Notes under the pieces: model-generated | The model's input: only the letters and a program-made list of their open reading frames with translations | Databases searched by the model: none | What the model was told of the DNA's origin: nothing | Part shown: in pieces, positions 7,267-63,659 of the stretch | How positions within the stretch are numbered: the first letter of the stretch is position 1 | Layout of the letters: every line of letters starts with the position of its first letter | Virus record (IMG/VR): IMGVR_UViG_3300043425_001539 | Location: 1-64,000 of that record | Length of the DNA stretch: 64,000 nucleotides | Direction: 5' to 3' (one strand) | Position numbers and translations under genes: made by a program

Positions 7267-7573
7267 GGCTTATTCCTTCTATATTTTTCTTTTTGGCAAT
7301 ATCTTTAGCTTCTGATAAATCTTGTTTCTTTTTAACAAGTTCAGCTTTTTCAATATCTAATTTTTTTAGTTTAATATCTAATTCCAAAATTTGAGCATCA
7401 TAAGATTTTTTTTCTCTAACCGCCTTTTTTCTTAATTCTATTAAATCTTCAAGCTCAGCAATTAATTGCGCCGTCGACGGTTCTTTTTCTAATTTTGTTT
7501 CCGCCTTTTCTTTATTTTCAGTAATTTCATATTTGGTTTTTTCCCAATCGGTGAATTTAACAAAATTGCTCAT
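7253..7573 (-). CDS. Hypothetical coiled-coil protein
   Basis: K/E-rich; late-type motif at 7591-7603. Confidence 0.6.
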   Translation of the reverse strand: MSNFVKFTDWEKTKYEITENKEKAETKLEKEPSTAQLIAELEDLIELRKKAVREKKSYDAQILELDIKLKKLDIEKAELVKKKQDLSEAKDIAKKKNIEGISHDQE

Positions 7574-47508: not shown

Positions 47509-47835
47509 TTAGATTGAATCCAATCCCAAATCTTCAACCTCTTTTTCTTTTTTGTTTTTCTTTTTTACTTTTTTAGAATCTTCCTCTTCAGAATCTTCTT
47601 CCTCTTCAGAATCTTCTTCCTCTTCAGAATCTTCTTCCTCTTTAGAATCTTCTTCCTCTTTAGAATCTTCTTCCTCTTTAGAATCTTCTTCCTCTTCAGA
47701 ATCTTCTTCCTTTTCAGAATCTTCTTCCTCTTCAGAATCTTCTACGTTTTTTTTCACAAGGTCTTCTTCCTCTTCAGACAATTTATTTTTCTCAAACTCT
47801 GTTATAAAGTCGCCGAAGCTTTTTAAATGTTTCAT
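47509..47835 (-). CDS. Acidic repeat protein with a capsid-targeting-like N-terminus
   Basis: MKHLKSFGDFITE followed by about 9 copies of S(E/K)EEED. Confidence 0.7.
   Translation of the reverse strand: MKHLKSFGDFITEFEKNKLSEEEEDLVKKNVEDSEEEEDSEKEEDSEEEEDSKEEEDSKEEEDSKEEEDSEEEEDSEEEEDSEEEDSKKVKKKNKKEKEVEDLGLDSI
47575..47742. repeat. 18-nt coding tandem repeat, about 9 copies
   Basis: Variants of agaatcttcttcctcttc. Confidence 0.9.
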
Positions 47836-47866
47836 ATTTATTATTTTTGTTTTTAATTAAAGCATC

Positions 47867-48226
47867 TTATTTTAAAGACAGTAAGTACTTTAGTTTTTGA
47901 ATATCCGCAATAACTTCATCTTTAATATTTGCTAATTCTGAATCTTGTTGCGCCATAAAAGTATTATTCATAAAATCTTCAAACGATTCAATAAATGCAT
48001 CAATTTTAAGATTATCATAATCTGCAAGGGTTATTTGCCTAACTCCATCAAACTTAGGTCTCTTATACTTTCCGCTATAAACTTCAACTATTCTGTCAAA
48101 TTTATCGCTTAAGCTTTCATAGGTTTCACCAAATGCTTTATGTTCTGCATACGAAGTAGTTTGCCAATGTAAAATTTTAAGCTGTCCTTGAATTTGGACA
48201 ATATTTGCAAGTAAGTCCTTTTCCAT
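47867..48226 (-). CDS. Ferritin/Dps-like four-helix protein (DUF5856-like)
   Basis: LHWQT.SYAEHKAF...Y......D..VE..G..KLKYLL; late motif at 48241-48254. Confidence 0.7.
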   Translation of the reverse strand: MEKDLLANIVQIQGQLKILHWQTTSYAEHKAFGETYESLSDKFDRIVEVYSGKYKRPKFDGVRQITLADYDNLKIDAFIESFEDFMNNTFMAQQDSELANIKDEVIADIQKLKYLLSLK

Positions 48227-48283
48227 TTTATTTTTGTATTTTTATTTATATATCATTTTTGTGGCAAAGCTTATTAATAATTA

Positions 48284-50125
48284 TTAAATTCTTCCTTCAA
48301 GCCACTTTTTTCTTTTGTCTGATGATACACCAAATGCAATGTCAATAAATTTTCCAGCTGACCTATCTTGTCTTACTTTGAACATTTTTCTTTCAGCCAT
48401 AATTACTTGCCAATCTTCAATGCTTAAAGATCCTAAACCTTTTAAATATCGAACTCCTTTATAAGCTTGTCCGCTTTTTTCAAATTCACCCCATTCTTGC
48501 AATGAATAAAAATATTTGCGTTTATTATTTACTTCGGCTGAAACAAGAGGAGTTATTAAAATATTTAATTTGCCTTGCTCAATTACTTGAGGAAACCATT
48601 TATAAAAAAGATTAATTACCAAAGATGCAATATGTCCAATTCCATCAGGATCCCAATCAGTTGCAATTGCAATGTTGGCAAAAGAACATTTACTTCCGTC
48701 TTTAGGTTCAAGATTTAAGATATTCATTAAATCAATAATTTCATTGTTTGTACTTAAATCTGATAGACTCCTTGCATTTTTAATTTTTCCTTTTAATGAA
48801 TAAACAGCATCAACTCGCGGATCTCTTTTTTGTAAAATTGAACCCATAGCCGAAGACCCTTCTACAATAAATAAAGTTCCTTTACTTCCTGACGGCGGAA
48901 AATACTTGTCGCTGATTTTCTTTGCTGCTGCTCTCTTTTTACTTTTGATTGCATTTAAATCTTGTTTAAGATTACGCTCGTCAATTTTCTTCTTTACATT
49001 TTCATAAAATTCTGATCTTAATACTCCATTTTTTAGTTTTTTATAAAATTCTTTTTCAAGTAAAGGTTGAATTTCCCACCGGCCTGCAGCATATTTAGTT
49101 TTATTTTGATCCGCAAATCTAACCAATTTAGGAGGTACATTTAAAACTAAAAATGTATCATAAAAGTGATGGCCTAATTGATAGTCAAGCATTTCGTTGA
49201 TCCAATCAATAAATATTTTTTGATGAATGCCTGTGCAGATAGCGCCATTCACAAAAGATGCGCTTGCGCCGTTTTCATATTTTTCCCAAGCAAAAAATAT
49301 TCCCAATTTGGTTTTAAACATAAGTGCATTATCAGGCAAAAAAGGCAAATTAAGATCAAGCTTCTCGCCATCAAACACAAATTCAATTTCCAAATTGGAA
49401 ATTACCGGGTCTTCCTTTTTAAGGAATTGCCGAAAAATAAACATTGTATGCAAATACTCTTTATCCCATGTGCAATTTTTAAAAACATCTTTTCTTGGAA
49501 TATAAGTTACTGTTGTTCCTGTAACAGCATTCTTTTTCTTTTCGGTTTTCTCTTCTTTGTCTTTGACAAATTTTGTCCAATGAACTTCAAAATGAACCTC
49601 ATTATTTGTGGTTGATACACTAAATTCATCAGACAACATATTAACCAATGCAGCGCCTACGCCGTTTGTTCCGATAAGAGAGTCTGATGAATTTTCGTTA
49701 TAAAAATTTGAACCTGCTCGCAACATTGACATTGCTGTCTCAACATTTGATTGTCCTGTTTTAGGATTAGGCTTTTCTGCATTTATAAATCCGCTTCCAG
49801 TATCTGTTACGGTTACCTGATTTGTTTTGGAATTTATTTCTACCGTAATCTTCGGCATTGTGCCTTTCATTCTTTTTGCTTCGTCAAAAGCATTGTCTAC
49901 AATCTCATTGAGCATTTTGTAGAATCCAACTGAAACAATTTTATTTTTTTCTACAAGTTTGCCATTTTCCACAATTTGAACTTTTTCTTCTGTCTTTTCT
50001 ACACTTCCTATATACATAGTTGGTCTAGCAAGACAGTGTTCAAAATCGCTTAATGCAACTATGGTTTTATTGTCATATTTTGACCTTTTTTCTTTTTCTA
50101 AATCCTTCGGATCTTTATTTGCCAT
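48284..50125 (-). CDS. Type II topoisomerase, ATPase/TOPRIM subunit (gp39+60/GyrB-like)
   Basis: RPTMYIGS, EIVDNAFDE, DTGSG, GTNGVG, EGSSA, LKGK, TDWDPDG, YLKGLGS. Confidence 0.93.
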   Translation of the reverse strand: MANKDPKDLEKEKRSKYDNKTIVALSDFEHCLARPTMYIGSVEKTEEKVQIVENGKLVEKNKIVSVGFYKMLNEIVDNAFDEAKRMKGTMPKITVEINSKTNQVTVTDTGSGFINAEKPNPKTGQSNVETAMSMLRAGSNFYNENSSDSLIGTNGVGAALVNMLSDEFSVSTTNNEVHFEVHWTKFVKDKEEKTEKKKNAVTGTTVTYIPRKDVFKNCTWDKEYLHTMFIFRQFLKKEDPVISNLEIEFVFDGEKLDLNLPFLPDNALMFKTKLGIFFAWEKYENGASASFVNGAICTGIHQKIFIDWINEMLDYQLGHHFYDTFLVLNVPPKLVRFADQNKTKYAAGRWEIQPLLEKEFYKKLKNGVLRSEFYENVKKKIDERNLKQDLNAIKSKKRAAAKKISDKYFPPSGSKGTLFIVEGSSAMGSILQKRDPRVDAVYSLKGKIKNARSLSDLSTNNEIIDLMNILNLEPKDGSKCSFANIAIATDWDPDGIGHIASLVINLFYKWFPQVIEQGKLNILITPLVSAEVNNKRKYFYSLQEWGEFEKSGQAYKGVRYLKGLGSLSIEDWQVIMAERKMFKVRQDRSAGKFIDIAFGVSSDKRKKWLEGRI

Positions 50126-50173
50126 AATTTATTTTTTTGTTATTTTTAAGATGCTATTTTCTTGTTGTTATAA

Positions 50174-50223
50174 TTATATCACACAAAAGAAAAAAGTTCT
50201 GTAGAAGTCATCTACAGAACTTT
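50174..50223 (-). terminator. Terminator hairpin overlapping the middle-type promoter GAACT-N14-GATATAA
   Basis: AAAGTTCTGTAGA/TCTACAGAACTTT inverted repeat. Confidence 0.7.
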
Positions 50224-50246
50224 GTATCTTAAATATTTTAAATATT

Positions 50247-50702
50247 TTAATTTTCAGAAAGAGTAACCATGTATCTATACATAAATCCTTTAATCTCCAT
50301 TGATTTACCTATTTGACTGGATTTAAAACCCATTGCTTTTAATCGGCTAATAACACCATCCCTGCCTCTGTTAGTCTCACAACGATAAATCAATCTACGT
50401 TCTCCATTATATTCTACCAATTCTTGAGTGTTTGCACCTATTTCCCAAGCATCTTTTGTAAGTAATTCTTCAAATTTGGGGTCTTTGGCAAATTTGTTGC
50501 TTTCATTGATAAATTTATCATATTCCTGTCCGTAGCCATTACTTGTTAGAATATCTTCAACATCTTCTAATGAATAATTGTTTGGCAATTCTTTTTTAAG
50601 CCAAGATAAGCTTGGATTTGCTTTAATGATTTTATTTACCAATTTTTCTGGTGTAATTTTTCCTTCGTTGATAAAACTGTCAAAATCTTTAATGGGTTTC
50701 AT
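50247..50702 (-). CDS. Hypothetical protein with a capsid-targeting-like N-terminus (ATG at 50702)
   Basis: MKPIKDFDSFINE; internal DKFINE. Confidence 0.65.
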   Translation of the reverse strand: MKPIKDFDSFINEGKITPEKLVNKIIKANPSLSWLKKELPNNYSLEDVEDILTSNGYGQEYDKFINESNKFAKDPKFEELLTKDAWEIGANTQELVEYNGERRLIYRCETNRGRDGVISRLKAMGFKSSQIGKSMEIKGFMYRYMVTLSEN

Positions 50703-50718
50703 GCTTGTGTTTTTTTTA

Positions 50719-51288
50719 TTAAACATTTCTTTTTCTAAAGGTCCAAGGACTAACTTTAATTCCTTTTTGACCCCATAGACCAAGTTTTTGTTTTTTTGCA
50801 TTTTTTTGTAATTCTTTAAGTTTCTCTCTTTCTTCTTTAGGCATTTCTTTACCCGGATCATAAAACCAAGCATACCCATTTTCAATTAAGTACTCCGATA
50901 AATCTTTACCGTTTACATAAATTTTTGCAACCATTCTGTCATAAATATCAGCATACATAGGAACTACATAAACGCATTCTCCTTTAATTTTTTCTCTTAC
51001 ATGATCGCCAGCTTCCCTGCCAAAAATTTGGGTTTTTCTTACATAAGGAGAATAAACTTCTGGGCAATCTGCTGCATACAATCTTACCCAAACAAATGTA
51101 TTTGTGGTAGAAGTATCAAACTTAATTTTGTAACTGTCACCATCATGGACAGCAAAAACTTTTGCATTAGTTGCTATGCTGTCGGATTGAGTGTAGACTG
51201 TTGTGTCGGTTGCTATACTGTCAGTTTGTGCATAAGCTGTTACAGTTGAAAAAATAGATAATAATAAAATTTTTAGTAAGTTTTTCAT
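50719..51288 (-). CDS. Thermonuclease (staphylococcal nuclease family) with signal peptide
   Basis: HDGDS, VRL..ADCPE, DIYDR, LIENGYAW, AK..KLGLW. Confidence 0.88.
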   Translation of the reverse strand: MKNLLKILLLSIFSTVTAYAQTDSIATDTTVYTQSDSIATNAKVFAVHDGDSYKIKFDTSTTNTFVWVRLYAADCPEVYSPYVRKTQIFGREAGDHVREKIKGECVYVVPMYADIYDRMVAKIYVNGKDLSEYLIENGYAWFYDPGKEMPKEEREKLKELQKNAKKQKLGLWGQKGIKVSPWTFRKRNV

Positions 51289-51309
51289 AAATGTTTTTTT
51301 TTTTTATTT

Positions 51310-51600
51310 TTAATCGACTACAAATACTAAGTAAACTTTGCCATCTGTATTACGCCATCCAATGTAAGGAATATCAGCGTTTTCAAGTTCTTTTGCCATT
51401 CTATTTGATTGAGTCTGAATTTTTACATCAACGAATGCAAGATCCTCAGGAAATGCATTATTATCTTCCATAAAATTATTAAGTAAATTATCAACGCCTG
51501 TTATATTCATATCTGAGTATTCATTGGCATTCCACTTATTTTTGAATTGCTGGCCTTTTCCTTCATTCAAGAAGGCTTCACATTCTTTGATGTGTTTCAT
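51310..51600 (-). CDS. Small acidic protein, paralog 2, capsid-targeting-like N-terminus
   Basis: MKHIKECEAFLNE; similar to 51614-51916. Confidence 0.75.
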   Translation of the reverse strand: MKHIKECEAFLNEGKGQQFKNKWNANEYSDMNITGVDNLLNNFMEDNNAFPEDLAFVDVKIQTQSNRMAKELENADIPYIGWRNTDGKVYLVFVVD

Positions 51601-51613
51601 AATTTTTTTATTT

Positions 51614-51916
51614 TTAATCGACTACAAATACCAAATAATCTTCATCGTCATCAGCATTATGCCAATCAATATAAGGAAGATTAGCTGTTTCGAGCTCTTT
51701 TGTCATTTGCTTAACCTGAGATTGAGATTTCATTGTTACATTAACAAATGCAACGTCATCAGGTGAAGCATTGTTATCTTCCATAAAAGTATTAAGTAGG
51801 TCAACATCATCACCTATTATGCTCATGTCCCAATACTCATCGGCATCCCATTTATTTTTTAAATGTTCGCCTTTTCCTTCGTTCAAGAAGGATTCAAATT
51901 CTTTGATATGTTTCAT
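51614..51916 (-). CDS. Small acidic protein, paralog 1 (ATG at 51916)
   Basis: MKHIKEFESFLNE; late motif at 51931-51941. Confidence 0.75.
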   Translation of the reverse strand: MKHIKEFESFLNEGKGEHLKNKWDADEYWDMSIIGDDVDLLNTFMEDNNASPDDVAFVNVTMKSQSQVKQMTKELETANLPYIDWHNADDDEDYLVFVVD

Positions 51917-51939
51917 ATTTTTTAATTTTATTTTATATA

Positions 51940-53766: not shown

Positions 53767-53786
53767 ATTTGTTTGAATAATTATAT

Positions 53787-53820
53787 TACAAATATACAAC
53801 TATTTGTTGAATAAAAAAAA
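53787..53820 (-). promoter_or_regulatory. Early (host-sigma) promoter, TAnnTTTG type
   Basis: TATATTTG at 53789-53796 in the same context as the other two copies. Confidence 0.7.
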
Positions 53821-53869
53821 TTTTTAGGTAACTTTTTTTCTTAAAAAGTGTTAAAATTTTCTATAAGAT

Positions 53870-54544
53870 TTAATCTAATTTAAGAATAATATTTTTTAGC
53901 TTAGCACAGTTTTCATATTCTTCGCTTTCAACATACATATCTATCATTTGATTCAATGTAAGAATCATATCATTTATATTTTTGACAGTTACTAATATGT
54001 CTTCATCTTCATATAAAATTAAATCTTTTAATATGTCAATTTCCGATGTTGTAATAAATTCAAATATTGACCTAAAAAAATCTTTTATTTCTTTTTCCTG
54101 CTCGTTAAGATTAGGATCATATATCCATTCTTCTTTAATACTTATGGAATTTAAAATATCATCAACTTCATATGAATTTTCGATGTCCGATTCTTGCATA
54201 AGTTGTTTAAGTATTAATACAGATTGTACGGTTAATAAAAAACTATTGTCTATTTCTGATGATGAATGGCTTAATTCTGTATCTTTGCACAAACCCCATT
54301 CAATAGGTAATTGCTGTGAAGGTATAACCAAAACTTCTCCACGTAAAGACATATTAAAAACGTCAGATGCAATTTTATTAATAGGGCCTTCTTTTAATGA
54401 TTCATTATAAATTATCCAAACAGGCCCAATTTTGATTGGAGCAACCCATCCTTTAATTAATTCATTTAATCCACCAACGTCAAAACAGTCTGATGGCGGA
54501 TTGACTGTTTTGACGATGGATTCAGTTGTTATTAAAACTGCCAT
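53870..54544 (-). CDS. Hypothetical protein with a C-terminal UvrB/C-like motif
   Basis: ESEEYENCAKLKNII. Confidence 0.6.
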   Translation of the reverse strand: MAVLITTESIVKTVNPPSDCFDVGGLNELIKGWVAPIKIGPVWIIYNESLKEGPINKIASDVFNMSLRGEVLVIPSQQLPIEWGLCKDTELSHSSSEIDNSFLLTVQSVLILKQLMQESDIENSYEVDDILNSISIKEEWIYDPNLNEQEKEIKDFFRSIFEFITTSEIDILKDLILYEDEDILVTVKNINDMILTLNQMIDMYVESEEYENCAKLKNIILKLD

Positions 54545-54566
54545 AAATTATTTGTTATTTTCGTAA

Positions 54567-55646
54567 TCATCCTTCACAACTTACGCAATCTGGGTCAGTT
54601 GCTCTTGCTGCTATATCACCTCGTAATACACTTTCTGTCCTTGTATAATATAAAGTTTTAATACCTTGTCGCCAAGCTTCCATATGTACTTGGTTAATCC
54701 ATTTAGGTTCAGCGCTTGAAGGGAAGGCAAGATTTAAAGAGACAGATTGATCTATGTATTGTTGTCGTATCCCAGCTTGCTTGACTAAATCCAATTGATT
54801 AATTTCTTTAAATGTCTTAAATACATCTTTAACCATATTGCATCTGTTTTGCTCATCTTGAGTTAATTCGTTAAAATTACACACCTTTCCGTCAAGAAAA
54901 CACCAGGAATCCAAAAAGTCCAGTCCTTGAATAGAACCGCCGTCCACAAAAATTTGATCCCAAACTTCTTTGGTATTTTTACCAATTCCTTCAAGTACTT
55001 TTTCAAGTTCGTGGTTTTTTCTAATAAAAGTTCCTTTTGCAGTTTGCTCAGTAAAAACATTGGCAGCCCAAGGCTCAATACCTGAAGATACGTTTCCACT
55101 TAATTTGGAATTTGACACAGTTGGAGCAACAGCACGTAAATGTGTATTTCTAAATCCTGTGTCTTTGCACCATAAAGGTTCACCGTATTCGTTTGCCAAA
55201 TCTCTACTTGCTCTTTCGCTTTCAATTTTTAATTGTGAAAAAATTCTGCGAGTTTCAAACTGAGCCTGTAGGCCTTCAAAAGGAATTCCGTTTTGTTGCA
55301 AATATGTATGCCATCCAAGTACGCCTAATCCTAATGCTCTTCCTTTTTCAGCTGATCTTACAGCATTTTCAAAGCCTTTCATATTTTTGGCTTTTTGTAT
55401 AAATTCCTCTAAAACTCCATCCAAAAACCAAGTAGCTGTATACATCAAATCCGTATCTTTCCACTCGTTGTATTTAGCAAGATTGAGAGAACTTAAACAA
55501 CAAACAAAAGAGTGCGATTCATCAGTGAAAAGCACAATTTCACTACAATTATGGACTAATATATCATTAGCATAAAAGTTTTTATTTTCAGCAACTGTTA
55601 TATCATAAACCGGTTCACGTTTTGTTGTTTTTTTAATTTTTAACAT
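54567..55646 (-). CDS. nrdA: Ribonucleotide reductase alpha C-part preceded by a 33-aa split-intein C-fragment
   Basis: VYDITV..NFYANDILVHN|CSEI..CCLSSLNL, APT, DQSVS.NL, KTLYY, CVSCEG. Confidence 0.93.
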   Translation of the reverse strand: MLKIKKTTKREPVYDITVAENKNFYANDILVHNCSEIVLFTDESHSFVCCLSSLNLAKYNEWKDTDLMYTATWFLDGVLEEFIQKAKNMKGFENAVRSAEKGRALGLGVLGWHTYLQQNGIPFEGLQAQFETRRIFSQLKIESERASRDLANEYGEPLWCKDTGFRNTHLRAVAPTVSNSKLSGNVSSGIEPWAANVFTEQTAKGTFIRKNHELEKVLEGIGKNTKEVWDQIFVDGGSIQGLDFLDSWCFLDGKVCNFNELTQDEQNRCNMVKDVFKTFKEINQLDLVKQAGIRQQYIDQSVSLNLAFPSSAEPKWINQVHMEAWRQGIKTLYYTRTESVLRGDIAARATDPDCVSCEG

Positions 55647-57055
55647 GTTTCAACTTTATTTTTTATTTTTATAAATTCAAATTGATCTAAATGAGTTTCT
55701 AAATTTTCTTTTAATTTTTGTGAAAATCTAGAAGAATTTGAATTTTCTTCAATTATCCTAGATTCATTTATATTATACTTTATCTCTGCAATACATTTAT
55801 CGTTTATTATTAAATAAAACATTACTTCACCCCAGTCTGGTTCAACTGTATAAAAGAACAAACCGTTACTAATAAAATAGCTTTTGGTTGGCAAATTCTT
55901 TATTATTTCATTTCTAGTAAGTCCTATAGAAATTCCCTTATTAGGTTCTATATTTTCCATTTCATGTGTTTTTTGATATATTTCCATTTCTTTCATTTTT
56001 TTAAAGTCTTTTATTGATAAGCCTTCTATGTTTGTTAGAAAAATATAATTATGATACTTTGCAGAAAACATAACACAATCTTGTATTTTTTCAAAATTTG
56101 ATTCATCTCTAATATATCCTTTTAATTCTATTAAATATTCTTCGTTATCAATATTAATAATAAAATCTGGCGTATATAATTTAGAGCCAATGCAAATAGT
56201 TACATTTTCATAAGACCAACTTTCTAATATATTTTCATTTGGTTTAATTATTTTTTCTATAAACTCAGATTCTAAAGAAGATCTAGTAATAAAAGGTTCT
56301 GTATTAAGGCATTTTTTAAAATCTGCGTTGTTAAATTCTGTTCTTTTAAATATTGGATTACCCATTGAATTTGAACCCATTATTGAATGATATGTCCCTA
56401 TTATAGAATTTATAATTTTATATGCCTCATCTAAATTACTGTCGGTTAAGTTTTTTAAGATATCTTTATCATAATATTTTTTATAAGCTTCTTTATTCCA
56501 AAAGTTTTGTATTTTAGATAATTTATATTCATCGCTATTAACTATCTTTCGTCGAAACTGCGAATAAATTTTATCTACATTTTCATTGGAGACGCCATCC
56601 AAGAAATATCCTTTATTTGATAAAACCAATCTTTTCCAATCTGTAGTATTAAATTCTTTATCGTAAGATTTTCGTTTATCTGTCCAATTATCCTTCTTAT
56701 TTTTTAAATTAGGTCTACCTTTAAGTTTTTTAGAGTGATCTGGTCTTCTTTTACCTCTAAATGAATGTCCCCTATTATAATTAGCATCTTTTACATCATG
56801 TCTAAATGTTATATTATCAAAAATTTTGTATTTGTTATCATCAACTTCAGATTTACAAACTTTTAAGAAATCATCTAATGTTAAGATTTTATTTTTTATA
56901 ATATACTTTAGTACATAAAAATATTTATCTTTATAGACTTTCTTACAAATATGTATAATACTTGAATCTATTAAATCTTCAATTTTTTCAATATTTTTTT
57001 TGATAGTTAATACAGATAGTTTTTTATACCCTTGTAATACTTCTAAAGTGTTCAT
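55640..57055 (-). mobile_element. Free-standing PD-(D/E)xK homing endonuclease between the nrdA halves (likely ATG at 57055)
   Basis: GKRRPDHSKKLKG (NUMOD-like); RSSLE..WSYE..YTPDF..LIELKG. Confidence 0.75.
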
Positions 57056-57104
57056 GACCAATATAAATTTTATTTATGTTATATATTCAAGTCATGAACA
57101 CTTT
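57045..57104 (-). promoter_or_regulatory. 14-bp hairpin sequestering the HEG AUG, with a late-like promoter in the loop
   Basis: AAAGTGTTCATGAC..GAATATATAAC..GTCATGAACACTTT. Confidence 0.8.
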
Positions 57105-57109
57105 TTTAC

Positions 57110-58240
57110 TTAATTTGTAATTAAAATGTCATCTTCCAATAAATCTTTTGCCTCTACCCAACCTCTTTGTGTAAATAATTTATGATTAGCTGTGCATTTT
57201 ATTGTTTTATTATTATCTAAATCTTCAATTTCATATACTTCAGCTGAATCATCAGTCATACCAAAATCGGTTATTAATTTCCATTCATTTATGTTAGTAT
57301 CAATATTACGTGATAGCGTATAAATTTGATCTTCTAATTTAAGTATTTCACCAATTTCATCTATTCTTACTTTATGAATTTCATCACTTATTTTAATATC
57401 AATTATCGTATCACCTGTCACACAAATATTAGTCATAAATACTTTTAGACCGTTTTTCTTATATGATTCGGGGTTTTGTTTATTGACATTGCCTTTAAAC
57501 ATAATATAAGGTTCACCGGTCGCTTTTCTTTTTTGCAAAAGTTTGCCCCATTTACGGCGTGCTTCGGTATCACCATCTAATAATTTGCGCATAAATTTAT
57601 CACCAACAACTGCGCATTGATGCATATTTAATGATTGGCGATTAACATCACCTTTAGGTTCTCGTGTTTCCAACCAATCTTCAAAATCTTTATGCTCAAT
57701 ATTAATATTTGTACTTGCTGCGCCTCTTCTTACAGCACCTTGATTGGTTGCAAGAATTGTTGAATCATAAATTTTGCAAAAAGGAACCACTCCATCTGAT
57801 GTTCCATTACCCGTTATTTTTGATCCAGCAGGTCTGATTTGATTAATACCAATACCTACTCCACCTCCATGTTTTGCAAGCAACATTAGTTCCAAATTTT
57901 TAGAACCTATTTCATAAATACTATCGCCAACATCAATCCCAAAACAACTAATAGGTAATCCTCTATCTGTTCCCATATTTGACAAAACTGGTGATGCCAA
58001 GCCTAGCCAGCCTTTCCAAATATAATCAAAAAATTTAGTAGCAAGGTGTGGCTTTCCTAATCTTTTAGCAACAGTGGTAGAAACCCGCCAATAAGCATCT
58101 TTAGGTTTTTCTCCCGCTAAAAGATATCCTTTGGATATTGTGTTAACATAAATTTCTGTTGCGCCCCAATCAGGAATATCAACTCCAAGTTCCCAGCCCA
58201 ACATATCTAATAATTCTTGTACTTTTTCGTTATTCATCAT
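57110..58240 (-). CDS. nrdA: Ribonucleotide reductase alpha N-part (272 aa) plus a 104-aa split-intein N-fragment
   Basis: ASPVLSN, LPISCF, GGGVG, RRGA, TGEPY, MTNI|CVTGDT..CTANH..WVEAKDL...D. Confidence 0.93.
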   Translation of the reverse strand: MMNNEKVQELLDMLGWELGVDIPDWGATEIYVNTISKGYLLAGEKPKDAYWRVSTTVAKRLGKPHLATKFFDYIWKGWLGLASPVLSNMGTDRGLPISCFGIDVGDSIYEIGSKNLELMLLAKHGGGVGIGINQIRPAGSKITGNGTSDGVVPFCKIYDSTILATNQGAVRRGAASTNINIEHKDFEDWLETREPKGDVNRQSLNMHQCAVVGDKFMRKLLDGDTEARRKWGKLLQKRKATGEPYIMFKGNVNKQNPESYKKNGLKVFMTNICVTGDTIIDIKISDEIHKVRIDEIGEILKLEDQIYTLSRNIDTNINEWKLITDFGMTDDSAEVYEIEDLDNNKTIKCTANHKLFTQRGWVEAKDLLEDDILITN

Positions 58241-58256
58241 ATTTTATTTTTTCTTT

Positions 58257-59279
58257 TTAAAACCAATCATCTGCATTCCAATTTTCATTTTCGTTTGCTT
58301 TACTATAATCGGTAGATCTTAAAGCAAAGAAATCCGTCCAAGTAACGCCTCCTGTCAAATGATAAAACCAATCCAAATTAGAGGCTTTTTCTTCGTCAAA
58401 TTCAAAATAATCAGCACTGCCTTTAACAGAATTATATCCCAATTCGTTAAGTTTTTCGTTAACTCTTTTAGTGATAAATTCTTTTAAATCACTTGCCTTA
58501 AGATTTTCCAAATCGCCCATCTCAAAAATTTTATCAATAAATTTATGTTCCAATTCTCTGATTAACTTAGCTGCTTTAAAAACATCTTCTTTAGCTTCGT
58601 CCAATAATTCAGGATATTCTTCACACATATGTCTAAATAATTGACAGCCCATTCTTGAATGTAAAGATTCATCTCTAACACTCCATTTCATTTGCTGTCC
58701 GATTCCTTTTAGCATATCTCCTCTCATTTGGAATGAGTATAAAACCGCAAATGAAGAATATAACGCAACCCCTTCTGCAAAAGCTGAAAAAATAGCTAAA
58801 CTGCGAGCAACTTCAACTCTTGCTTGTGGGTTCGTTGCTAAATCATTAGGAGTCCAATCAGCTGTTGTGCTGGTTAATAATTCAAACCTTTCTTTCATTG
58901 TTTCATCATGTAGAAAGCCTTCAAAATTGTCTAATCCCAATGTTTCATTTAAGTATGAATAAGCTCGGGCATGAATAGTTTCAAAATATCCAAATGCCAT
59001 TGCCATTTCTTTAATTTCATGTTTAGGAAACCACCTAGTTACCATTCCAGTCCAATAATCTGATACCGCGCATTCAGTTTGCGCAAAGCCTAATAGAATA
59101 TTCCCGACTAAATGTTTTTCTTCTTTGGTCAATTTTTCATTCCAATCCTTAATATCTGCGCCCATTGGAATTTCGGTGTGCATCCAAAATGCTTGACTTT
59201 GTGGCATCCAGCCGTTCAAATCATATTCAGGATATTCAAATGGTTTATAAGGAATTCTTTCTGTAAATAGCTTACTCAT
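58257..59279 (-). CDS. nrdB: Ribonucleotide reductase beta subunit, class Ia
   Basis: ETIHARAYS, EG..LYSSF, RDESLH, DFFA. Confidence 0.93.
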   Translation of the reverse strand: MSKLFTERIPYKPFEYPEYDLNGWMPQSQAFWMHTEIPMGADIKDWNEKLTKEEKHLVGNILLGFAQTECAVSDYWTGMVTRWFPKHEIKEMAMAFGYFETIHARAYSYLNETLGLDNFEGFLHDETMKERFELLTSTTADWTPNDLATNPQARVEVARSLAIFSAFAEGVALYSSFAVLYSFQMRGDMLKGIGQQMKWSVRDESLHSRMGCQLFRHMCEEYPELLDEAKEDVFKAAKLIRELEHKFIDKIFEMGDLENLKASDLKEFITKRVNEKLNELGYNSVKGSADYFEFDEEKASNLDWFYHLTGGVTWTDFFALRSTDYSKANENENWNADDWF

Positions 59280-59280
59280 A

Positions 59281-60657
59281 TTATTTTATATATTTTTTAA
59301 GTTGTTCAATTTCATCTTCAATATCCATATATTCTTTTTTTGCCTTTTTTCTTTTACCGTAGTAATTTGCAAGAATCGTTCTAAACACCGAGTCCTCTTC
59401 CTTTTTAAACAAAGCTCCTGACGACGTTTTAATATATTTATCTACGTCAACTTCTTCATTTTTATCGACGTTGTATAGATATGATTCCGGAGATATATTC
59501 CATTGCCTCATTATTGAAGGATAAAGAGACGCAAAGTCAAACGATGCAACCCATTCATATATTCCTGTTTTGGGATCAACGACAAAAGCTCCTTCATAGT
59601 GTTCCTTCTTTTTAGTTATTTTATCCGTTTTAGGAAAAACCTTACCTCTTGACCAATTTTCGCGTGCCATTGCAGCTTCAGCCATCCAAATTGGGGAAAA
59701 TGCCCGATTTGCTTCAACTTGGGTAATATTTCCAAGCAGCAAAAAAGTTTGCATTGTGTTAATTTTTTCATCGATCATTTCAACCAATTTGGTATCAACC
59801 GCATTATAGAAAATATATGTTTCAAAATCATTTTCATACATATCTTGCAAAGTGCCTGGATATTTAATTTTATTTATTCCCAGCGCTGCTTTTGCTACAT
59901 AGTCCAATGTGTTATTTTCTTTGATATCAATAACCCGATCCCATTTTTTATATACATCAAGATAGTCAACAACAAGTCGGTGAACAGGAAACTGTAAATC
60001 ACCTGCTAATTTGTATGTTGGTGAACATGCTGAGATGTCAATGTTTAATCTTTTGCATCGAGTAATTAAATATGTCCAGTCAAAACCAATAAAATTCCAT
60101 CCAGTCAAAAGTGGCATTTTTGGAACTGCTTTCAAGAAAAAAGAAGAAAGCATATCATATTCGGTTTTAAAATATAGATAATTAAAATCTACTTTTTGAT
60201 TGATATGTTCCTCAATTTTTTTCTTGATGTTAAATATTTGTTCAGCAGTTAATTGCTTTGTTCCCATCGAGATTACTTTTTCTTTATGACAAAAGGTAAT
60301 TGCAGTGACAGGAGTTTTTGCCAATTCTGGTTTAGGCCATTCATCGCCTACAAAGACCTCAATATCAATAAAGAATTTTTTGGGAACATTATTTGAATAA
60401 ATGTTTTTGGTGCGTTCTTCAGGTAATGAAAGTAAAAATTCTTCAATTCTCCATTTACTTAAGAATTTAGTTTTTTTCTTCTTTACAGGTTTGCCGTCCC
60501 AGGACATAACTCCTGGGAACGGTTTATCATTTCCTGTGCAATATTCCCATTCAAACATTTCTTCCATTGGAACAGATATCCTATCAAGAGCAACATCACC
60601 ATTTTCATTAAAATAAGAAATTGTAAGTGTTGAATCTTTTTGTTCAATATCAATCAT
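59281..60657 (-). CDS. polB: Family B DNA polymerase, N-terminal subunit (exonuclease plus motif A; gp43A-like)
   Basis: DIE, GWN..GFD, YN..D, YEGAFV, DFASLYPSI...NISPE; ends in the fingers helix. Confidence 0.92.
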   Translation of the reverse strand: MIDIEQKDSTLTISYFNENGDVALDRISVPMEEMFEWEYCTGNDKPFPGVMSWDGKPVKKKKTKFLSKWRIEEFLLSLPEERTKNIYSNNVPKKFFIDIEVFVGDEWPKPELAKTPVTAITFCHKEKVISMGTKQLTAEQIFNIKKKIEEHINQKVDFNYLYFKTEYDMLSSFFLKAVPKMPLLTGWNFIGFDWTYLITRCKRLNIDISACSPTYKLAGDLQFPVHRLVVDYLDVYKKWDRVIDIKENNTLDYVAKAALGINKIKYPGTLQDMYENDFETYIFYNAVDTKLVEMIDEKINTMQTFLLLGNITQVEANRAFSPIWMAEAAMARENWSRGKVFPKTDKITKKKEHYEGAFVVDPKTGIYEWVASFDFASLYPSIMRQWNISPESYLYNVDKNEEVDVDKYIKTSSGALFKKEEDSVFRTILANYYGKRKKAKKEYMDIEDEIEQLKKYIK

Positions 60658-60688
60658 GGTTTATATTTTTAGATGTTAAAATGAAAAA

Positions 60689-61171
60689 TTAGTATCCGTT
60701 TTTTTGCCTTTCGCGATTATGCTCATTTTTGGACATATACATATTATACATTTCCTGCGAAGTCATTCCGATAGAAGCGGCATAATTCATAAAGAAATGC
60801 AACATATCCACAATCTCAAATTTGCATTCCAGTTGGTCATCAATAGACAAATCAGAAAATTTTAAATTGGCATATTTATTGTAATCTTTTTTCCAACGTT
60901 TCCAAACAGCTGACCCACCTGAAGAAACACCGCCCAAAGAATCTGTTGCTTCATGAATTTCATCGATCATTGCGTGATTATTCATGTGCCAAAAATTCAT
61001 TATATCCCTAAGAGACATATTTTCAAAGTCATAACCATAAACATTTTTTTGAGTTTCAGCTTGAAGATTTAAAATATCGCCCAAAGTATCTGTAAATTCG
61101 TTTGATTCAATTGCTTTGGACCAAAGGTCATCAATTTTTAAATGCGAACAAGTATTATCTGTATTTGCCAT
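60689..61171 (-). CDS. Dimeric dUTPase/dCTP pyrophosphatase (T4 gp56/MazG-like fold)
   Basis: EIHE, WKRWK, EIVDMLHFF, Y..KN..N..RQ..GY; middle motif at 61191-61217. Confidence 0.8.
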   Translation of the reverse strand: MANTDNTCSHLKIDDLWSKAIESNEFTDTLGDILNLQAETQKNVYGYDFENMSLRDIMNFWHMNNHAMIDEIHEATDSLGGVSSGGSAVWKRWKKDYNKYANLKFSDLSIDDQLECKFEIVDMLHFFMNYAASIGMTSQEMYNMYMSKNEHNRERQKNGY

Positions 61172-61241
61172 ATTATTATAGTGTTTGTTTTTATATTCAA
61201 TTATTATACTTAGTTCTTTTTTAAGAATAATGTTGGTTTGA

Positions 61242-61267
61242 AAACTTTTTTTTAAATGCGTATATAA
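61242..61267 (+). promoter_or_regulatory. Middle-type promoter AAACT-N14-TATATAA, divergent
   Basis: Same motif on the plus strand, facing a non-coding repeat region. Confidence 0.5.
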
Positions 61268-61325
61268 CCTATACGTTGTTTAGGTTGGTGAGATACTTAT
61301 ACTAAGCTACTTATTACAAGTTAAA

Positions 61326-61373
61326 CTTAAAGAATAACTTAATTAAGATCTTAAAGAAAGACTTAAAGTATTG
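61326..61373. repeat. Four 12-bp phased repeats beginning CTTAA
   Basis: CTTAA at 61326, 61338, 61350 and 61362. Confidence 0.6.
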
Positions 61374-61478
61374 ACATCTTGACATTACCATCTTTATGAT
61401 TTATGTCTTATTGTCATAAAAATAGGATTTGCACAATCTTTGCAGATAATAAATAAAAAAAAACAAATTTTATACATT

Positions 61479-61838
61479 ATGGCACATCATTTTCATTCAA
61501 CCAAACTTTACGATCCGTACTCGCTTTTCAGCGTTTCATCAAACACAACTACTTACCCTTCGCCAAAGGCAATGAAAACTGATGATGGGTGGGTGCAGGA
61601 AATTATTTTACCTGGTTTTACTAAAGAAGAAATTAAAATTACAGTTGAGCAAGATTACTTTGTAGTTGAGGCTGAAACCGAACGCGAATTACCTACAACA
61701 CTTAATCAAAAAGTAACCAAAACATTTTTAGCTGATGACATTGATCCTGAGTCTGTTATCGCTACTTTGGAAAACGGTATTCTTAAAATCATGTTTTCAT
61801 TGACAAAACAGCCAGGAAAAGTAATCACAGTTAGTTAA
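61479..61838 (+). CDS. Small heat-shock protein (Hsp20; ATG at 61479)
   Basis: LPGF.KEEI.I..A.LENGILKI. Confidence 0.88.
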   Translation: MAHHFHSTKLYDPYSLFSVSSNTTTYPSPKAMKTDDGWVQEIILPGFTKEEIKITVEQDYFVVEAETERELPTTLNQKVTKTFLADDIDPESVIATLENGILKIMFSLTKQPGKVITVS

Positions 61839-61857
61839 ACAATTTGTTTTAAAAAGT

Positions 61858-61895
61858 AAAGCCTCGAGAAACTTAAAGTTTCTCGAGGCTTTTTT
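61858..61895. terminator. Bidirectional terminator between convergent genes
   Basis: AAAGCCTCGAGAAACT/AGTTTCTCGAGGCTTT. Confidence 0.85.
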
Positions 61896-61913
61896 ATTGT
61901 TAATCTGATTATT

Positions 61914-63287
61914 TTATAGATATCTTTCAGCCATCCTTGCCCAGTTTTTCATACCCAAGCTCTTGAATCCGGCGGCTTTTACAAAGGTTCTCATTGAAAC
62001 ATCTTTTGCCCGTTTCATAAATTCATATACTTCCAATTTATCTTCAATAGACATATCACGTGGTTCCATGTGTGGGAGTAATAAACGAATTCTTTCCATC
62101 AGAGTTACGTCGTCTGGGTTTACGTCAACCAAAATTGATCTTGAACGAATTGCGCCATCGGGATCCGCTTTATCTTTTGGTAAATTTGATATAAATACAA
62201 CTCGTCCTGCAAACTCAAAATAAGCTGGGATCATACCACCTTCAACAGCATTCCATTCTGCCTCAGGATCATTTTCGTAATCTTTAGGATCAAATACTAT
62301 AGATGATTTTTTAAGATATGAAATTCTTCTAACCTTTTTAGTGTCAAGCGCAGCTTTTAGGATGTTACGTCCTGTTTCGTCTCTAAACACAGAATCACAA
62401 TCATCAAAAACCAAAACTTTATTGCGGTATTGGAACATCTTCTTATACATCATAATTACTGAAACCGCACCGGAAACAATAATGTAATCTTCATCCTCGA
62501 CAAGGCCTTCATCTTTTAATGCACGTTCAACACTGAAAGTTTTACCTGTACCTGCTCTACCAGAAATAAACAATGAATTAAATCCACCTGCAGCAAGTCT
62601 TCGCGTAATTTCGTAAATGTCTTCAAGAGTTTCGTCCAACAGTTTTACTTTATCTTCCAATAGCATTTCATTACGCTTTACCGCTGGAATTTTTTCTGTG
62701 GTTGATGTTACACCCTTTCTTACCTGCAAGATCATTCCGTATGAAATGCCCATACTTTTTGAAATGTCTGCAGCGCTCTCGCCTTGTTCCAATCTTGATT
62801 GGATTTCAGATTGTTCATCAGGTGACAAAGGTTTACGTGCTTCATACAAAGAAGATTCAACCAATTTATCAATTGATTTAGCGTAAGATGGATCATTAAT
62901 CAATCTTACAAATTCACTTAACAGAGAAACGATTGGAAAATTTTCACTTGATACAGAAAAATCTGCAACTCCAGAATTAGGCTTTGAAAGATATTCCAAA
63001 GTACCTATAATTCCTCTGCGTCCGCCACCATAAATTTTTACGCATGACAAATCCTTATCACTAAACAACATAACAACTGGTGTGTTATGATCATCATATC
63101 CAATAAACGGAAACAAAACGAATGCTTTGCCTGTCTTTTTGTTTAAAAAGGATTTTATAATTTCCGATGCTTGATTTAATTTAGGTTCTATATCAGTCTG
63201 AGACCTTCCTAAATTTTCGTTCATGCTATCAGAAGAATGCAAATCTCCGGAAATAAATTCCTCGAATAGTTGAATGTAATTCTTCAT
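61914..63287 (-). CDS. AAA+/P-loop ATPase with a central HTH-like segment
   Basis: GRAGTGKT, VLVFDDCD, FISN, AIRSR; late motif at 63305-63317. Confidence 0.75.
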   Translation of the reverse strand: MKNYIQLFEEFISGDLHSSDSMNENLGRSQTDIEPKLNQASEIIKSFLNKKTGKAFVLFPFIGYDDHNTPVVMLFSDKDLSCVKIYGGGRRGIIGTLEYLSKPNSGVADFSVSSENFPIVSLLSEFVRLINDPSYAKSIDKLVESSLYEARKPLSPDEQSEIQSRLEQGESAADISKSMGISYGMILQVRKGVTSTTEKIPAVKRNEMLLEDKVKLLDETLEDIYEITRRLAAGGFNSLFISGRAGTGKTFSVERALKDEGLVEDEDYIIVSGAVSVIMMYKKMFQYRNKVLVFDDCDSVFRDETGRNILKAALDTKKVRRISYLKKSSIVFDPKDYENDPEAEWNAVEGGMIPAYFEFAGRVVFISNLPKDKADPDGAIRSRSILVDVNPDDVTLMERIRLLLPHMEPRDMSIEDKLEVYEFMKRAKDVSMRTFVKAAGFKSLGMKNWARMAERYL

Positions 63288-63335
63288 TTAATTTTTTTTT
63301 ATTTTTATTATATATTTTGATTAAAATTTATTTTT

Positions 63336-63659
63336 TTATTTTTTTGGCTTAAACCCCGCGTCTCTTGCCTCTTTTGCTAAATCAGCATCAGCTTTACCCC
63401 AGGTACCTTCACCGCCAGTTAAAAAACTGTTTACTCGTGCATAACCCCATTGCTCCTGTCCTGCTCCAGGTCTATGCCCGCTTTTCCATGCTGCCATGCC
63501 TCTTCGCATAACTGCTCGAATTATTCCGATAGGAGCGCCTGATTCTTCGCTTTTCTTTTTGAGCGCTTTTTCGATATCGGGATTATCAATAGGACTTCTG
63601 TCAGTTGATTGTTGCTTTTCTTCAAGCAGCCAAGATTCATATGTTTTTGTGTATTCCAA
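63336..63659 (-). CDS. Conserved viral hypothetical protein (DUF5824-like)
   Basis: RRGMAAWKSGHRPG...QWGYARVNSF. Confidence 0.6.
   Translation of the reverse strand: MEYTKTYESWLLEEKQQSTDRSPIDNPDIEKALKKKSEESGAPIGIIRAVMRRGMAAWKSGHRPGAGQEQWGYARVNSFLTGGEGTWGKADADLAKEARDAGFKPKK

What the first reader, a model, noticed from the sequence alone, without database searches (positions are those of the whole stretch)
47509..63659. Unrelated late proteins share a T4-like capsid-targeting N-terminus
Seen: MKHLKSFGDFITE (47835), MKPIKDFDSFINE (50702), MKHIKECEAFLNE (51600), MKHIKEFESFLNE (51916), MKNYIQLFEEFIS (63287), MEYTKTYESWLLE (63659), and more weakly MSNFVKFTDW (7573). Several follow late motifs. 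Established: T4 internal proteins carry MKTYQEFIAE, cleaved by gp21 after (I/L)xE. Inference: these proteins are packaged in the head and injected, making them candidates for anti-defence or host takeover.
Basis: partly seen in the sequence, partly recalled or inferred. Interest (0 to 1): 0.62.

Follow-up and report, generated by a model that had tools for sequence, protein, structure and literature searches.

The report
Shared capsid-address tag on phage proteins
About 30 unrelated proteins of this uncultured freshwater jumbo phage begin with the same 13-residue peptide, which closely matches phage T4's capsid-targeting, protease-cleaved signal; relatives use it too, so it probably marks proteins loaded into the phage head, though nothing here shows packaging directly.

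Summary
The shared N-termini are real and far beyond chance. The window is the first 64 kb of a 238-kb freshwater jumbo phage with a T4-type core.

- **Extent:** 26 ORFs start with M-[KR]-x-[ILV]-[KQ]-x-F-x-x-F-[IL]-N-E. They fall into 20 BLAST-unrelated groups. The rate is 26/314 at N-terminal Met against 2/1316 at internal Met.
- **Level of selection:** Conservation is in the peptide, not the DNA; synonymous codons vary.
- **Match to T4:** The four fixed positions (aromatic -6, aromatic -3, I/L -2, E 0) are the residues mapped in T4's capsid targeting sequence for targeting and for gp21 cleavage.
- **Protease and scaffold:** The genome encodes an S77 (gp21-type) protease fused to a scaffold. 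The scaffold carries nine tandem 14-residue repeats with the same core.
- **Relatives:** Related uncultured jumbo and huge phages carry 8-37 tagged ORFs each. Cultured phage PAU has its own dialect on proteins its depositors call internal capsid proteins.
- **Natural experiment:** In relatives, a homologue of the Thoeris inhibitor Tad3 occurs with and without the tag plus a pro-region.

Packaging, cleavage and injection remain untested. "Late" is not shown, 7573 is not a member, and 51600/51916 are paralogs. This is a new, large-scale variant of a known mechanism.

The parts
47509..47835 (-). Tagged gene, 108 aa. The tag MKHLKSFGDFITE spans 47797-47835. The mature part is a very acidic (SEEEED)n repeat with a basic tail (pI 4.1).
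   Evidence: No Pfam or PHROG hit. The composition resembles the acidic tail of the T4 prohead-core protein gp67 seen; this is a resemblance in composition only.
48247..48254 (-). Late-type promoter-like box GATATATA. It lies 28 nt upstream of gene 47867-48226 (DUF5856); the tagged gene 47835 follows 31 nt after that gene's stop.
   Evidence: The same box sits about 30 nt upstream of the large structural genes.
50247..50702 (-). Tagged gene, 151 aa. The tag MKPIKDFDSFINE spans 50664-50702. It starts 17 nt after the stop of the signal-peptide SNase gene.
   Evidence: It is an ORFan; only the identical protein was found and the atlas search was blank. The strain variant has P3H and K5Q, both within the consensus.
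50502..50522 (-). Second, internal copy of the core (YDKFINE, residues 61-67 of the 50702 protein). This is a predicted second cleavage site.
51310..51600 (-). Tagged gene, 96 aa. The tag MKHIKECEAFLNE spans 51562-51600. It is a paralog of the next gene.
   Evidence: 60% identity to 51916. The strain variant P0003 has F instead of C at tag position 7.
51614..51916 (-). Tagged gene, 100 aa. The tag MKHIKEFESFLNE spans 51878-51916.
   Evidence: In a strain variant, 8 changes fall in or next to the tag: 6 silent, E8D and G14E.
61914..63287 (-). AAA+/HTH protein, 457 aa. It has a degenerate 14-residue tag MKNYIQLFEEFISG (63246-63287) that lacks the Glu at the cleavage position.
   Evidence: phrog_1250, AAA_16. 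Canonical 14-residue versions MKQYIKLFEDFITE and MKLYIKLFEEFIAE occur at 198202 and 204040.
63309..63316 (-). AATATATA box 29 nt upstream of the 63287 start. It is a weaker relative of the late-type box.
63336..63659 (-). DUF5824 protein, 107 aa. The tag MEYTKTYESWLLE spans 63621-63659 and is read from a TTG start.
   Evidence: The register of the tag (Glu at residue 13) supports the TTG start.
7253..7573 (-). It is not a member of the tag family.
   Evidence: There is no [ILV]-x-E in register and it falls below the matrix threshold.
24631..26244 (-). T4-type portal protein (gp20 family). This is head-module context that lies inside the window.
   Evidence: Portal_T4, E = 1e-67.

Best explanation
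The 13-residue N-terminus (consensus here MKHIKxFExF[IL]NE) is a capsid-targeting propeptide of the T4 type. The proposed steps are as follows.

1. Its amphipathic first part, with aromatic residues at -6 and -3 from the Glu, docks the protein onto the scaffold core of the assembling prohead. The scaffold is fused to the protease and is built from 14-residue repeats with the same core, Y-x-x-Y-[LIV]-x-E.
2. After the shell closes, the S77 (gp21-type) prohead protease cuts after the Glu of [IL]-x-E. It often cuts again at a second [IL]-N-E a few to about 50 residues further on. This releases the mature protein inside the head and chops the scaffold into short peptides.
3. The cargo then travels with the DNA. 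Some of it is probably structural or core material, such as the acidic 47835 protein. Some is probably delivered into the host.

**Shown here:** the motif, its strict N-terminal position, peptide-level selection, its modularity, the protease, the scaffold repeats, and conservation across a clade.

**Inferred:** binding to the scaffold, cleavage, packaging and injection.
For: **The tag in this genome**
- 26 strict carriers fall into 20 unrelated clusters.
- N-terminal against internal Met: 26/314 against 2/1316, p = 3e-17. The top 19 six-frame matrix hits are all ATG starts.
- Codons for I, L and N vary synonymously at the conserved positions.
- A strain variant has 6 silent changes out of 8 in and next to one tag, and P3H/K5Q within the consensus in another.

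**Match to T4**
- T4 CTS residues 4 and 7 mediate targeting and residues 8 and 10 processing (PMC9026906). These are the four conserved positions here.
- One carrier reads MKSFQEWLSE, against T4 MKTYQEFIAE.
- T4 gp23 is cut after FGSFLTE-65, the same core.

**Protease, scaffold and predicted sites**
- The S77 protease domain lies in a 614-aa ORF, with nine Y-x-x-Y-[LIV]-x-E repeats and I-L-E at residues 9-11.
- The major capsid protein (MCP) has S-L-N-E-43|G before the HK97 core.
- The residue after the Glu is A, G, S or N in 21 of 26 carriers.
- A second [IL]NE is enriched 4-5 fold at residues 14-40 in 229 tagged ORFs of relatives.

**The tag is an add-on**
- The cytidylyltransferase domain starts at residue 21 and LicD at residue 44.
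- Tad3 homologues occur with the tag plus a pro-region ending SINE|G, and without it starting exactly there.

**Relatives**
- 8-37 tagged ORFs per relative genome.
- More than 119 IMG/VR stretches and 134 unrelated cargo clusters.
- Tagged relatives have 2-13 scaffold repeats; PTm1 and pT24 have neither tags nor repeats.
- PAU has 14 genes with its own dialect, among them gp142 and gp154 ("internal capsid protein") and gp152 ("scaffolding").

**Timing**
- Tagged genes are nearly absent from the early-promoter region: 1/82 against 25/232, p = 0.0045.
Against: - There are no virion proteome, N-terminal sequence or expression data for this phage or any phage with this dialect. No RNA run holds it.
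- The number (about 10% of ORFs) and kind of carriers is unusually broad for head cargo: cytidylyltransferase, LicD, PAP2, AAA+ ATPases, and RNA-ligase and kinase-like proteins in relatives.
- The window carriers lie among replication genes. Tagged genes are not enriched for the late-type promoter box.
- The similarity of tag and scaffold repeat is limited to the four-position core; the repeats do not score on the tag matrix.
- The PAU labels are the depositors' annotation, and their basis was not seen.
- The complex prediction could not be run.
Confidence: 0.62

Rival explanations
1. The tag is a substrate and assembly signal for the prohead core only. On this reading, tagged proteins are auxiliary scaffold or core components, or assembly-time enzymes. 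They are cut and largely expelled or degraded during maturation, and are not delivered into the next host.
For: - The scaffold repeats carry the same core and are presumably destroyed.
- The 47835 and 198202 proteins are acidic and low in complexity, like the T4 core protein gp67.
- PAU's annotated scaffolding protein carries PAU's tag.
- T4 core fragments and propeptides mostly leave the head (PMC9026906).
Against: - Many carriers are folded enzymes or known host-directed proteins, such as the Tad3 homologue. Their pro-region ends exactly at the native N-terminus, which points to release of an intact, functional protein.
- T4 internal proteins and Alt, which carry such tags, are ejected.
Confidence: 0.17
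2. The tag has nothing to do with the capsid. It would be an N-terminal amphipathic helix used for something else: localisation to another phage-made structure, recognition by a chaperone or AAA+ translocase, regulated turnover, or efficient translation initiation in an AT-rich genome.
For: - Carriers include many cytoplasmic-type enzymes and lie in replication and metabolism modules.
- MK- starts are common in AT-rich genomes.
- There is no direct virion evidence.
- Jumbo phages of this group encode AAA+ proteins proposed to move proteins (PMC7824862).
Against: - A translation effect would act on the RNA, yet synonymous positions vary freely.
- The invariant Glu preceded by I/L at -2 and followed by a small residue is the gp21 cleavage logo.
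- The same core recurs in the protease-scaffold protein of tagged phages only and in T4's own gp23 cleavage site.
- PAU's dialect marks proteins annotated as capsid-internal.
Confidence: 0.12
3. The shared start is a DNA-level module. It would be a recombination or gene-cassette junction, or a copied 5' end, that spreads by gene conversion. Alternatively it is simply the conserved first helix of one diverged protein family.
For: - A dense patch of changes confined to the tag of 51916 in a strain variant looks like gene conversion.
- There are several paralog sets: five DUF285 proteins, 51600/51916, and 140248/181320.
Against: - There are 20 BLAST-unrelated clusters here and 134 in relatives, with different Pfam folds.
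- Codon choice at conserved residues follows or exceeds genome-wide diversity.
- The peptide is conserved between phages whose capsid proteins share only about 45% identity.
- Conversion between tags would be a consequence of the shared peptide, not an explanation for its conservation.
Confidence: 0.04

Closest known systems
Capsid targeting sequence (CTS) of T4 internal proteins IPI, IPII, IPIII and Alt (Mullaney and Black 1996, as reviewed in PMC9026906 and PMC3012670)
   Same: - It is a short N-terminal peptide shared by otherwise unrelated proteins.
- It has an aromatic at -6, an aromatic at -3, I/L at -2 and Glu at 0, followed by a small residue.
- A gp21-family protease is encoded.
- The cargo set is diverse and poorly conserved.
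- One carrier (MKSFQEWLSE) matches T4's MKTYQEFIAE position by position.
   Different: - It is usually 13 residues rather than 10, with extra conserved positions: K2, [ILV]4, [KQ]5 and N at -1.
- It sits on about 30 proteins per genome, against a handful in T4.
- It is found in a distant clade of uncultured, probably Bacteroidota-infecting, jumbo and huge phages.
- The scaffold is fused to the protease and is built of repeats of the same core.
- Targeting and cleavage have not been demonstrated.
Propeptides of head and ejection proteins of phiKZ, 201phi2-1 and SPN3US (PMC5694885, PMC9026906)
   Same: - These are giant phages with many internal head proteins processed after Glu by a diverged gp21 homologue.
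- Propeptides contain multiple cleavage sites.
- Paralogs can have identical N-termini, for example SPN3US gp53 and gp54.
   Different: - Those propeptides are mostly 80-160 residues long.
- They share no single short consensus across unrelated proteins.
- The cleavage logo there is A/S-x-E rather than [IL]-x-E.
- Those cases rest on proteomics; this one does not.
Sphingomonas phage PAU gp142 and gp154 ("internal capsid protein") and gp152 ("scaffolding"), GenBank JQ362498
   Same: - It is a cultured jumbo phage of the same capsid-protein clade, with about 31% identity.
- 14 genes start with a shared peptide, MK[TS][IL][ST]xLYE[AS]KLNE, that also ends in LNE followed by A or S.
- Its MCP loses about 65 residues by N-terminal sequencing (PMC5646251). 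The nearest [LIV]-x-E ends at Glu-64.
   Different: - It uses a different dialect: L-Y-E instead of F-x-x-F. It gives no hit with this phage's tag profile.
- Its protease and scaffold are separate genes.
- The capsid labels are the depositors' and were not verified here.
T4 prohead core proteins gp67 and gp68
   Same: They are small proteins with an N-terminal [LI]-x-E site and a strongly acidic tail, like the 47835 and 198202 proteins.
   Different: There is no sequence homology, only a resemblance in composition and layout.
Encapsulin cargo-loading peptides (from general knowledge, not tested here)
   Same: A short portable peptide directs unrelated enzymes into an HK97-fold shell.
   Different: - They are usually C-terminal and are not removed by a protease.
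- They bind the shell protein itself rather than a scaffold.

Membership tests
T4-type capsid targeting sequence (functional class) | Located at the extreme N-terminus of the precursor | tested here: met
   The top 19 six-frame matrix hits all start at ATG at ORF starts. The rate is 26/314 at N-terminal Met against 2/1316 at internal Met.
T4-type capsid targeting sequence (functional class) | Length of 10-20 residues, ending in the gp21 cleavage motif L/I-x-E | tested here: met
   The tags are 10-14 residues long and end in [ILV]-x-E. The exception in the window is 63287, which ends in F-I-S-G.
T4-type capsid targeting sequence (functional class) | Targeting residues equivalent to T4 positions 4 and 7 (aromatic, three residues apart) just upstream of the cleavage motif | tested here: met
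   F, Y or W at -6 and -3 in 25 of 26 carriers. The T4 mapping comes from PMC9026906.
T4-type capsid targeting sequence (functional class) | Shared by proteins whose mature parts are unrelated | tested here: met
   20 BLASTP-unrelated clusters in this genome and 134 in relatives. The Pfam folds differ.
T4-type capsid targeting sequence (functional class) | Genome encodes a gp21-family (Peptidase S77) prohead protease and a gp23-type capsid protein | tested here: met
   PF03420 at E = 2.4e-13; PF07068 at E = 9.5e-35; Portal_T4.
T4-type capsid targeting sequence (functional class) | The propeptide is removed by the prohead protease in vivo | not testable with these tools
   The evidence is indirect only. 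The same core occurs in the scaffold repeats and at the T4 gp23 site. The Tad3 pro-region ends at the native N-terminus.
T4-type capsid targeting sequence (functional class) | The peptide is sufficient to load a foreign protein into the head, and the cargo is present in virions | not testable with these tools
   The phage is uncultured and no proteome exists. The PAU annotation is the only hint.
T4 internal proteins IPI, IPII and IPIII (homologous family) | Sequence homology of the mature protein to a T4 internal protein | tested here: not met
   The window proteins have no Pfam or PHROG hit. Homologue searches find only self or strain variants.
Late genes of this phage | A late-type promoter box (GATATATA, about 30 nt upstream, as before structural genes) in front of the gene or its operon | tested here: inconclusive
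   The box is present before the 48226/47835 unit, and a weaker box lies before 63287. It is absent before 50702, 51600, 51916 and 63659. Carriers are not enriched for it, but they are depleted from the early-promoter region.

The most novel reading that the evidence does not exclude
A whole clade of freshwater, wastewater and other environmental jumbo and huge phages uses one portable 13-residue address label, which is in essence one unit of their scaffold's own 14-residue repeat. With it they load a large, fast-changing arsenal into the capsid: 8-37 proteins per genome and more than 130 unrelated families in a small sample. The arsenal includes enzymes and ready-made anti-defence proteins such as a Tad3-type Thoeris inhibitor. 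The proteins would be injected with the DNA and act before any phage gene is expressed. The label would then be a sequence-only way to list injected effectors in uncultured phages.
Probability: 0.35. Interest if true: 0.85.

Novelty: new variant of a known kind. Interest (0 to 1): 0.72.

Why it matters
- **Reading cargo from sequence.** If the tag works as in T4, the cargo of the phage head can be read straight from the genome. That cargo is normally found only by virion proteomics of cultured phages. Here it could be listed for hundreds of uncultured jumbo phages.
- **Candidate early-acting proteins.** The list would give a ready set of pre-packaged, possibly injected proteins, mostly of unknown function. 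It includes a homologue of a known Thoeris inhibitor.
- **A mechanistic idea for targeting.** The matching core in the scaffold repeats suggests that the cargo imitates a scaffold unit. This could be tested in T4 as well.
- **A possible tool.** It also offers a candidate portable packaging tag for engineering phages of Bacteroidota-type hosts.

Tried and rejected
**Searches that gave nothing**
- Megablast of the region against cultured phages found no match.
- Pfam and PHROGs on the window's tagged proteins found nothing for 47835, 50702, 51600 and 51916.
- The word-based homologue search found only self or strain variants.
- The ESM Atlas gave no usable lead.
- No paper in the library contains the tag strings.
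- No RNA run holds the region, so expression and timing could not be examined.

**Tag profile on other phages**
- PTm1, pT24, Lak-A1, MaF61, PAU and T4 gave zero hits. The profile is specific to this dialect, so a blank does not exclude other dialects. PAU proved this.

**Ideas tested and dropped**
- Enrichment of the late-type promoter box before tagged genes was not seen: about 38% of carriers against about 30% of all genes.
- 7573 as a member was rejected.
- 209821 (MEFKAYQVFMCE) lies in the early region and is probably a chance match.
- DNA-level conservation, as a recombination cassette, was rejected on synonymous variation.

**Not run**
- Complex prediction of the protease domain with a tagged N-terminus failed first on a coordinate slip. 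There is therefore no verdict on binding.
Full report
**Context.** The window is the first 64 kb of a single 238,475-bp IMG/VR phage contig. It has 32% G+C, CheckV estimates 84% completeness, and 292 of 314 ORFs lie on the minus strand.
- It has a T4-type core: a gp23-family capsid protein at 187328-189199, a Peptidase_S77 (gp21-family) domain at the start of a 614-aa ORF at 189221-191065, and a gp20-type portal inside the window at 24631-26244.
- The capsid protein is closest to an uncultured 462-kb phage, LR756500 (45% identity). Next come the Lak megaphages of Prevotella (39-43%) and the cultured jumbo phages pT24, PTm1 (Tenacibaculum) and PAU (Sphingomonas) at 31-35%.
- Early-type promoters contain TAnnTTTG, the Bacteroidota -7 box. 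The DNA is found in freshwater metagenomes of at least two independent studies, and no RNA run holds it.

**Observation.**
- Four are canonical: 47835, 50702, 51600 and 51916.
- 63659 fits but needs a TTG start, which is the first canonical start codon after the in-frame stop.
- 63287 has the hydrophobic part but no Glu.
- 7573 does not fit.
- 51600 and 51916 are paralogs; the others are unrelated.

**Extent and statistics.** The motif is genome-wide.
- 26 ORFs match M-x(1-6)-[FYWLC]-x-x-[FYW]-[ILVM]-x-E at their start. A few more match with slightly longer leaders, and about eight are degenerate versions without the Glu.
- A position matrix scored without the Met column and run over all six frames gave 19 top hits. 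All begin with ATG within a few codons of an upstream stop.
- The motif follows 26 of 314 N-terminal Met and 2 of 1316 internal Met (p = 3e-17). The two internal cases lie in the scaffold repeats.
- The 26 carriers form 20 clusters with no BLASTP similarity at 1e-3.

**Peptide or DNA?** The conserved I, L and N positions use ATA/ATC/ATT, TTA/TTG/CTT and AAT/AAC freely.
- In a strain variant recovered from an independent run, the tag of 51916 and the two codons after it carry eight changes. Six are silent, one is E8D (allowed by the consensus) and one is at P1'.
- In the same variant, 50702 changes P3H and K5Q, both towards the consensus. The paralog 51600 has F where the window has C.
- Selection therefore acts on the peptide.

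**Anatomy compared with T4.**
- The fixed positions are an aromatic at -6, an aromatic at -3, I/L at -2 and Glu at 0, followed by A, G, S or N in 21 of 26 carriers.
- In T4's ten-residue CTS, MKTYQEFIAE, residues 4 and 7 are needed for targeting and residues 8 and 10 for processing (PMC9026906). These are exactly the same four positions. The T4 CTS coding sequence was confirmed twice in the T4 genome at the ipII/ipIII locus.
- One carrier here, MKSFQEWLSE, matches T4's peptide position by position.
- T4's capsid protein is cut after FGSFLTE-65, the same core. T4's scaffold gp22 begins MLKEQLIAE|A.

**Protease and scaffold.**
- The protease ORF of this phage continues into a scaffold-like region. 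It holds nine tandem 14-residue repeats, each Y-x-x-Y-[LIV]-x-E, plus F-V-K-F-L-G-E further on and I-L-E at residues 9-11.
- The capsid protein has S-L-N-E-43 followed by Gly, just before the conserved shell domain. The equivalent stretch in LR756500 and PTm1 also reads [IL]-x-E.
- In PAU, N-terminal sequencing showed loss of about 65 residues (PMC5646251). The nearest site is L-M-E-64.

**Relatives.**
- A profile of the tag finds 17 ORF starts in LR756500 (dialect MKYIKEYEEFLNE), 20 in LR756504, and 37, 20 and 8 in three complete IMG/VR genomes of 482, 256 and 430 kb.
Within the 119 loci, 229 distinct tagged ORFs of at least 100 aa fall into 134 unrelated clusters.
- The host contigs are fragments of jumbo phages. 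Every relative genome tested for the protease after the first screen, including untagged pT24, has an S77 domain in a 527-717-aa frame.
- The tagged relatives have 2-13 copies of the Y-x-x-Y-[LIV]-x-E repeat there. PTm1 and pT24 have no tags and no such repeats.
- PAU has no hit with this dialect, but 14 of its genes start MK[TS][IL][ST]xLYE, mostly continuing [AS]KLNE|[AS]. The count is 14 forward, 0 reverse and 0 in the control. Among them are gp142 and gp154, which the depositors call internal capsid proteins, and gp152, called scaffolding.

**Cargo.**
- The window's own tagged proteins are ORFans.
- Elsewhere in the genome the tag precedes a cytidylyltransferase domain that starts at residue 21, and LicD, PAP2, DUF285 repeat, DUF5824 and AAA+ proteins.
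- In relatives, most of the 134 clusters have no Pfam hit and about 110 have no PHROG hit. The rest include ATPases, kinases, an ATP-grasp, an RNA-ligase-like protein, a cREC domain and a Tad3 domain.

**The Tad3 case is a natural experiment.** Tad3 binds and blocks the Thoeris sensor ThsB through its N-terminal helices (PMC13728456).
- Five relatives encode Tad3 homologues (E of 1e-20 to 1e-25).
- Two of them begin directly at the domain.
- Three carry the tag plus a 28-residue pro-region that ends S-I-N-E|G, exactly where the untagged proteins begin.
- Second [IL]NE sites are 4-5 fold enriched at residues 14-40 of tagged ORFs. This parallels the multiple sites in propeptides of T4, phiKZ and SPN3US (PMC5694885).

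**Timing.**
- A box GATATATA about 30 nt upstream marks the large structural genes. The early region (206-238 kb) uses TGTATATTTGTATATAA.
- Tagged genes are almost absent from the early region: 1/82 against 25/232, p = 0.0045. They are not enriched for the late box, and the window carriers sit among topoisomerase, ligase and RNR genes.
- "Late" is therefore unproven.

**Mechanism and rivals.**
- The best reading is a T4-type capsid-targeting propeptide: docking on the scaffold core, cleavage after Glu by the S77 protease, and release of the mature protein inside the head (confidence about 0.6). All steps after the sequence features are inference.
- Main rival: the same signal, but for core or assembly proteins that are destroyed rather than injected. 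This is likely for the acidic 47835 protein, which resembles T4 gp67 in layout.
- Lesser rivals are a non-capsid role for the helix, and a DNA-level module. The synonymous variation speaks against the latter.

**Comparison and novelty.**
- It works like the T4 CTS and meets every sequence-level criterion of that class. The biochemical criteria could not be tested.
- It differs from T4 in length and consensus, in scale (about 10% of ORFs), in the fused repeat-built scaffold that carries the same core, and in the lineage. No paper in the searchable library contains the tag.
- I rate it a new variant of a known kind.

**Limits.**
- No proteome exists.
- The gene calls are my own greedy ORF calls.
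- The contig is incomplete, so counts are lower bounds.

Noticed in passing
window 54567-58240 (-): The ribonucleotide reductase large subunit is "fractured". An N-terminal ORF ends in an intein N-half. A 473-aa ORF with no family hit follows and is a candidate free-standing homing endonuclease. A third ORF begins with the intein C-half (…VHN|C) and continues as the rest of the RNR.
   Followed up: partly
window 59281-60657 (-): The family-B DNA polymerase ORF stops at position 146 of 453 of the polymerase profile. The polymerase seems to be split, and the C-terminal part was not located.
   Followed up: no
G000 206000-234000 (outside the window); examples in the window at about 22990 and 53800: About 20 small ORFs are preceded by TGTATATTTGTATATAA. 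This contains TAnnTTTG, the Bacteroidota sigma-A -7 box, so these are likely host-polymerase early promoters and a hint to the host phylum. A distinct GATATATA box lies about 30 nt before structural genes.
   Followed up: partly
window 51872-51899: In an independent freshwater run, the tag of gene 51916 carries eight changes within 28 nt, six of them silent. The rest of the gene differs little. This looks like gene conversion between tag copies.
   Followed up: partly
window 50719-51288 (-): A staphylococcal-nuclease homologue with a signal peptide, not the tag, lies directly upstream of tagged gene 50702.
   Followed up: no
L001:73-1917 (G000 189221-191065): Protease and scaffold are one ORF here and in all tagged relatives, and also in PTm1 as annotated. 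In PAU and T4 they are separate genes.
   Followed up: partly
L005:12820-13302 (G000 184820-185302): A SET-domain (lysine methyltransferase-type) protein is encoded next to the capsid genes. Its N-terminus, MDFKSFEEILE, is tag-like.
   Followed up: no
L003:11249-12988 (G000 75249-76988): A 579-aa protein with a degenerate tag (MTFLKYKEFLIQE) contains a Hint/intein domain at residues 66-214. Its LR756500 homologue has a canonical tag.
   Followed up: no
window 4-381 (+): The contig end carries a repetitive stretch that reads as HLCLMCHLY repeats. It is probably a tandem DNA repeat at the assembly end rather than a gene.
   Followed up: no
window 61440-61838 (+): An Hsp20/alpha-crystallin small heat-shock protein is encoded on the rare plus strand, between the tagged AAA+ gene and the pyrophosphohydrolase gene.
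   Followed up: no
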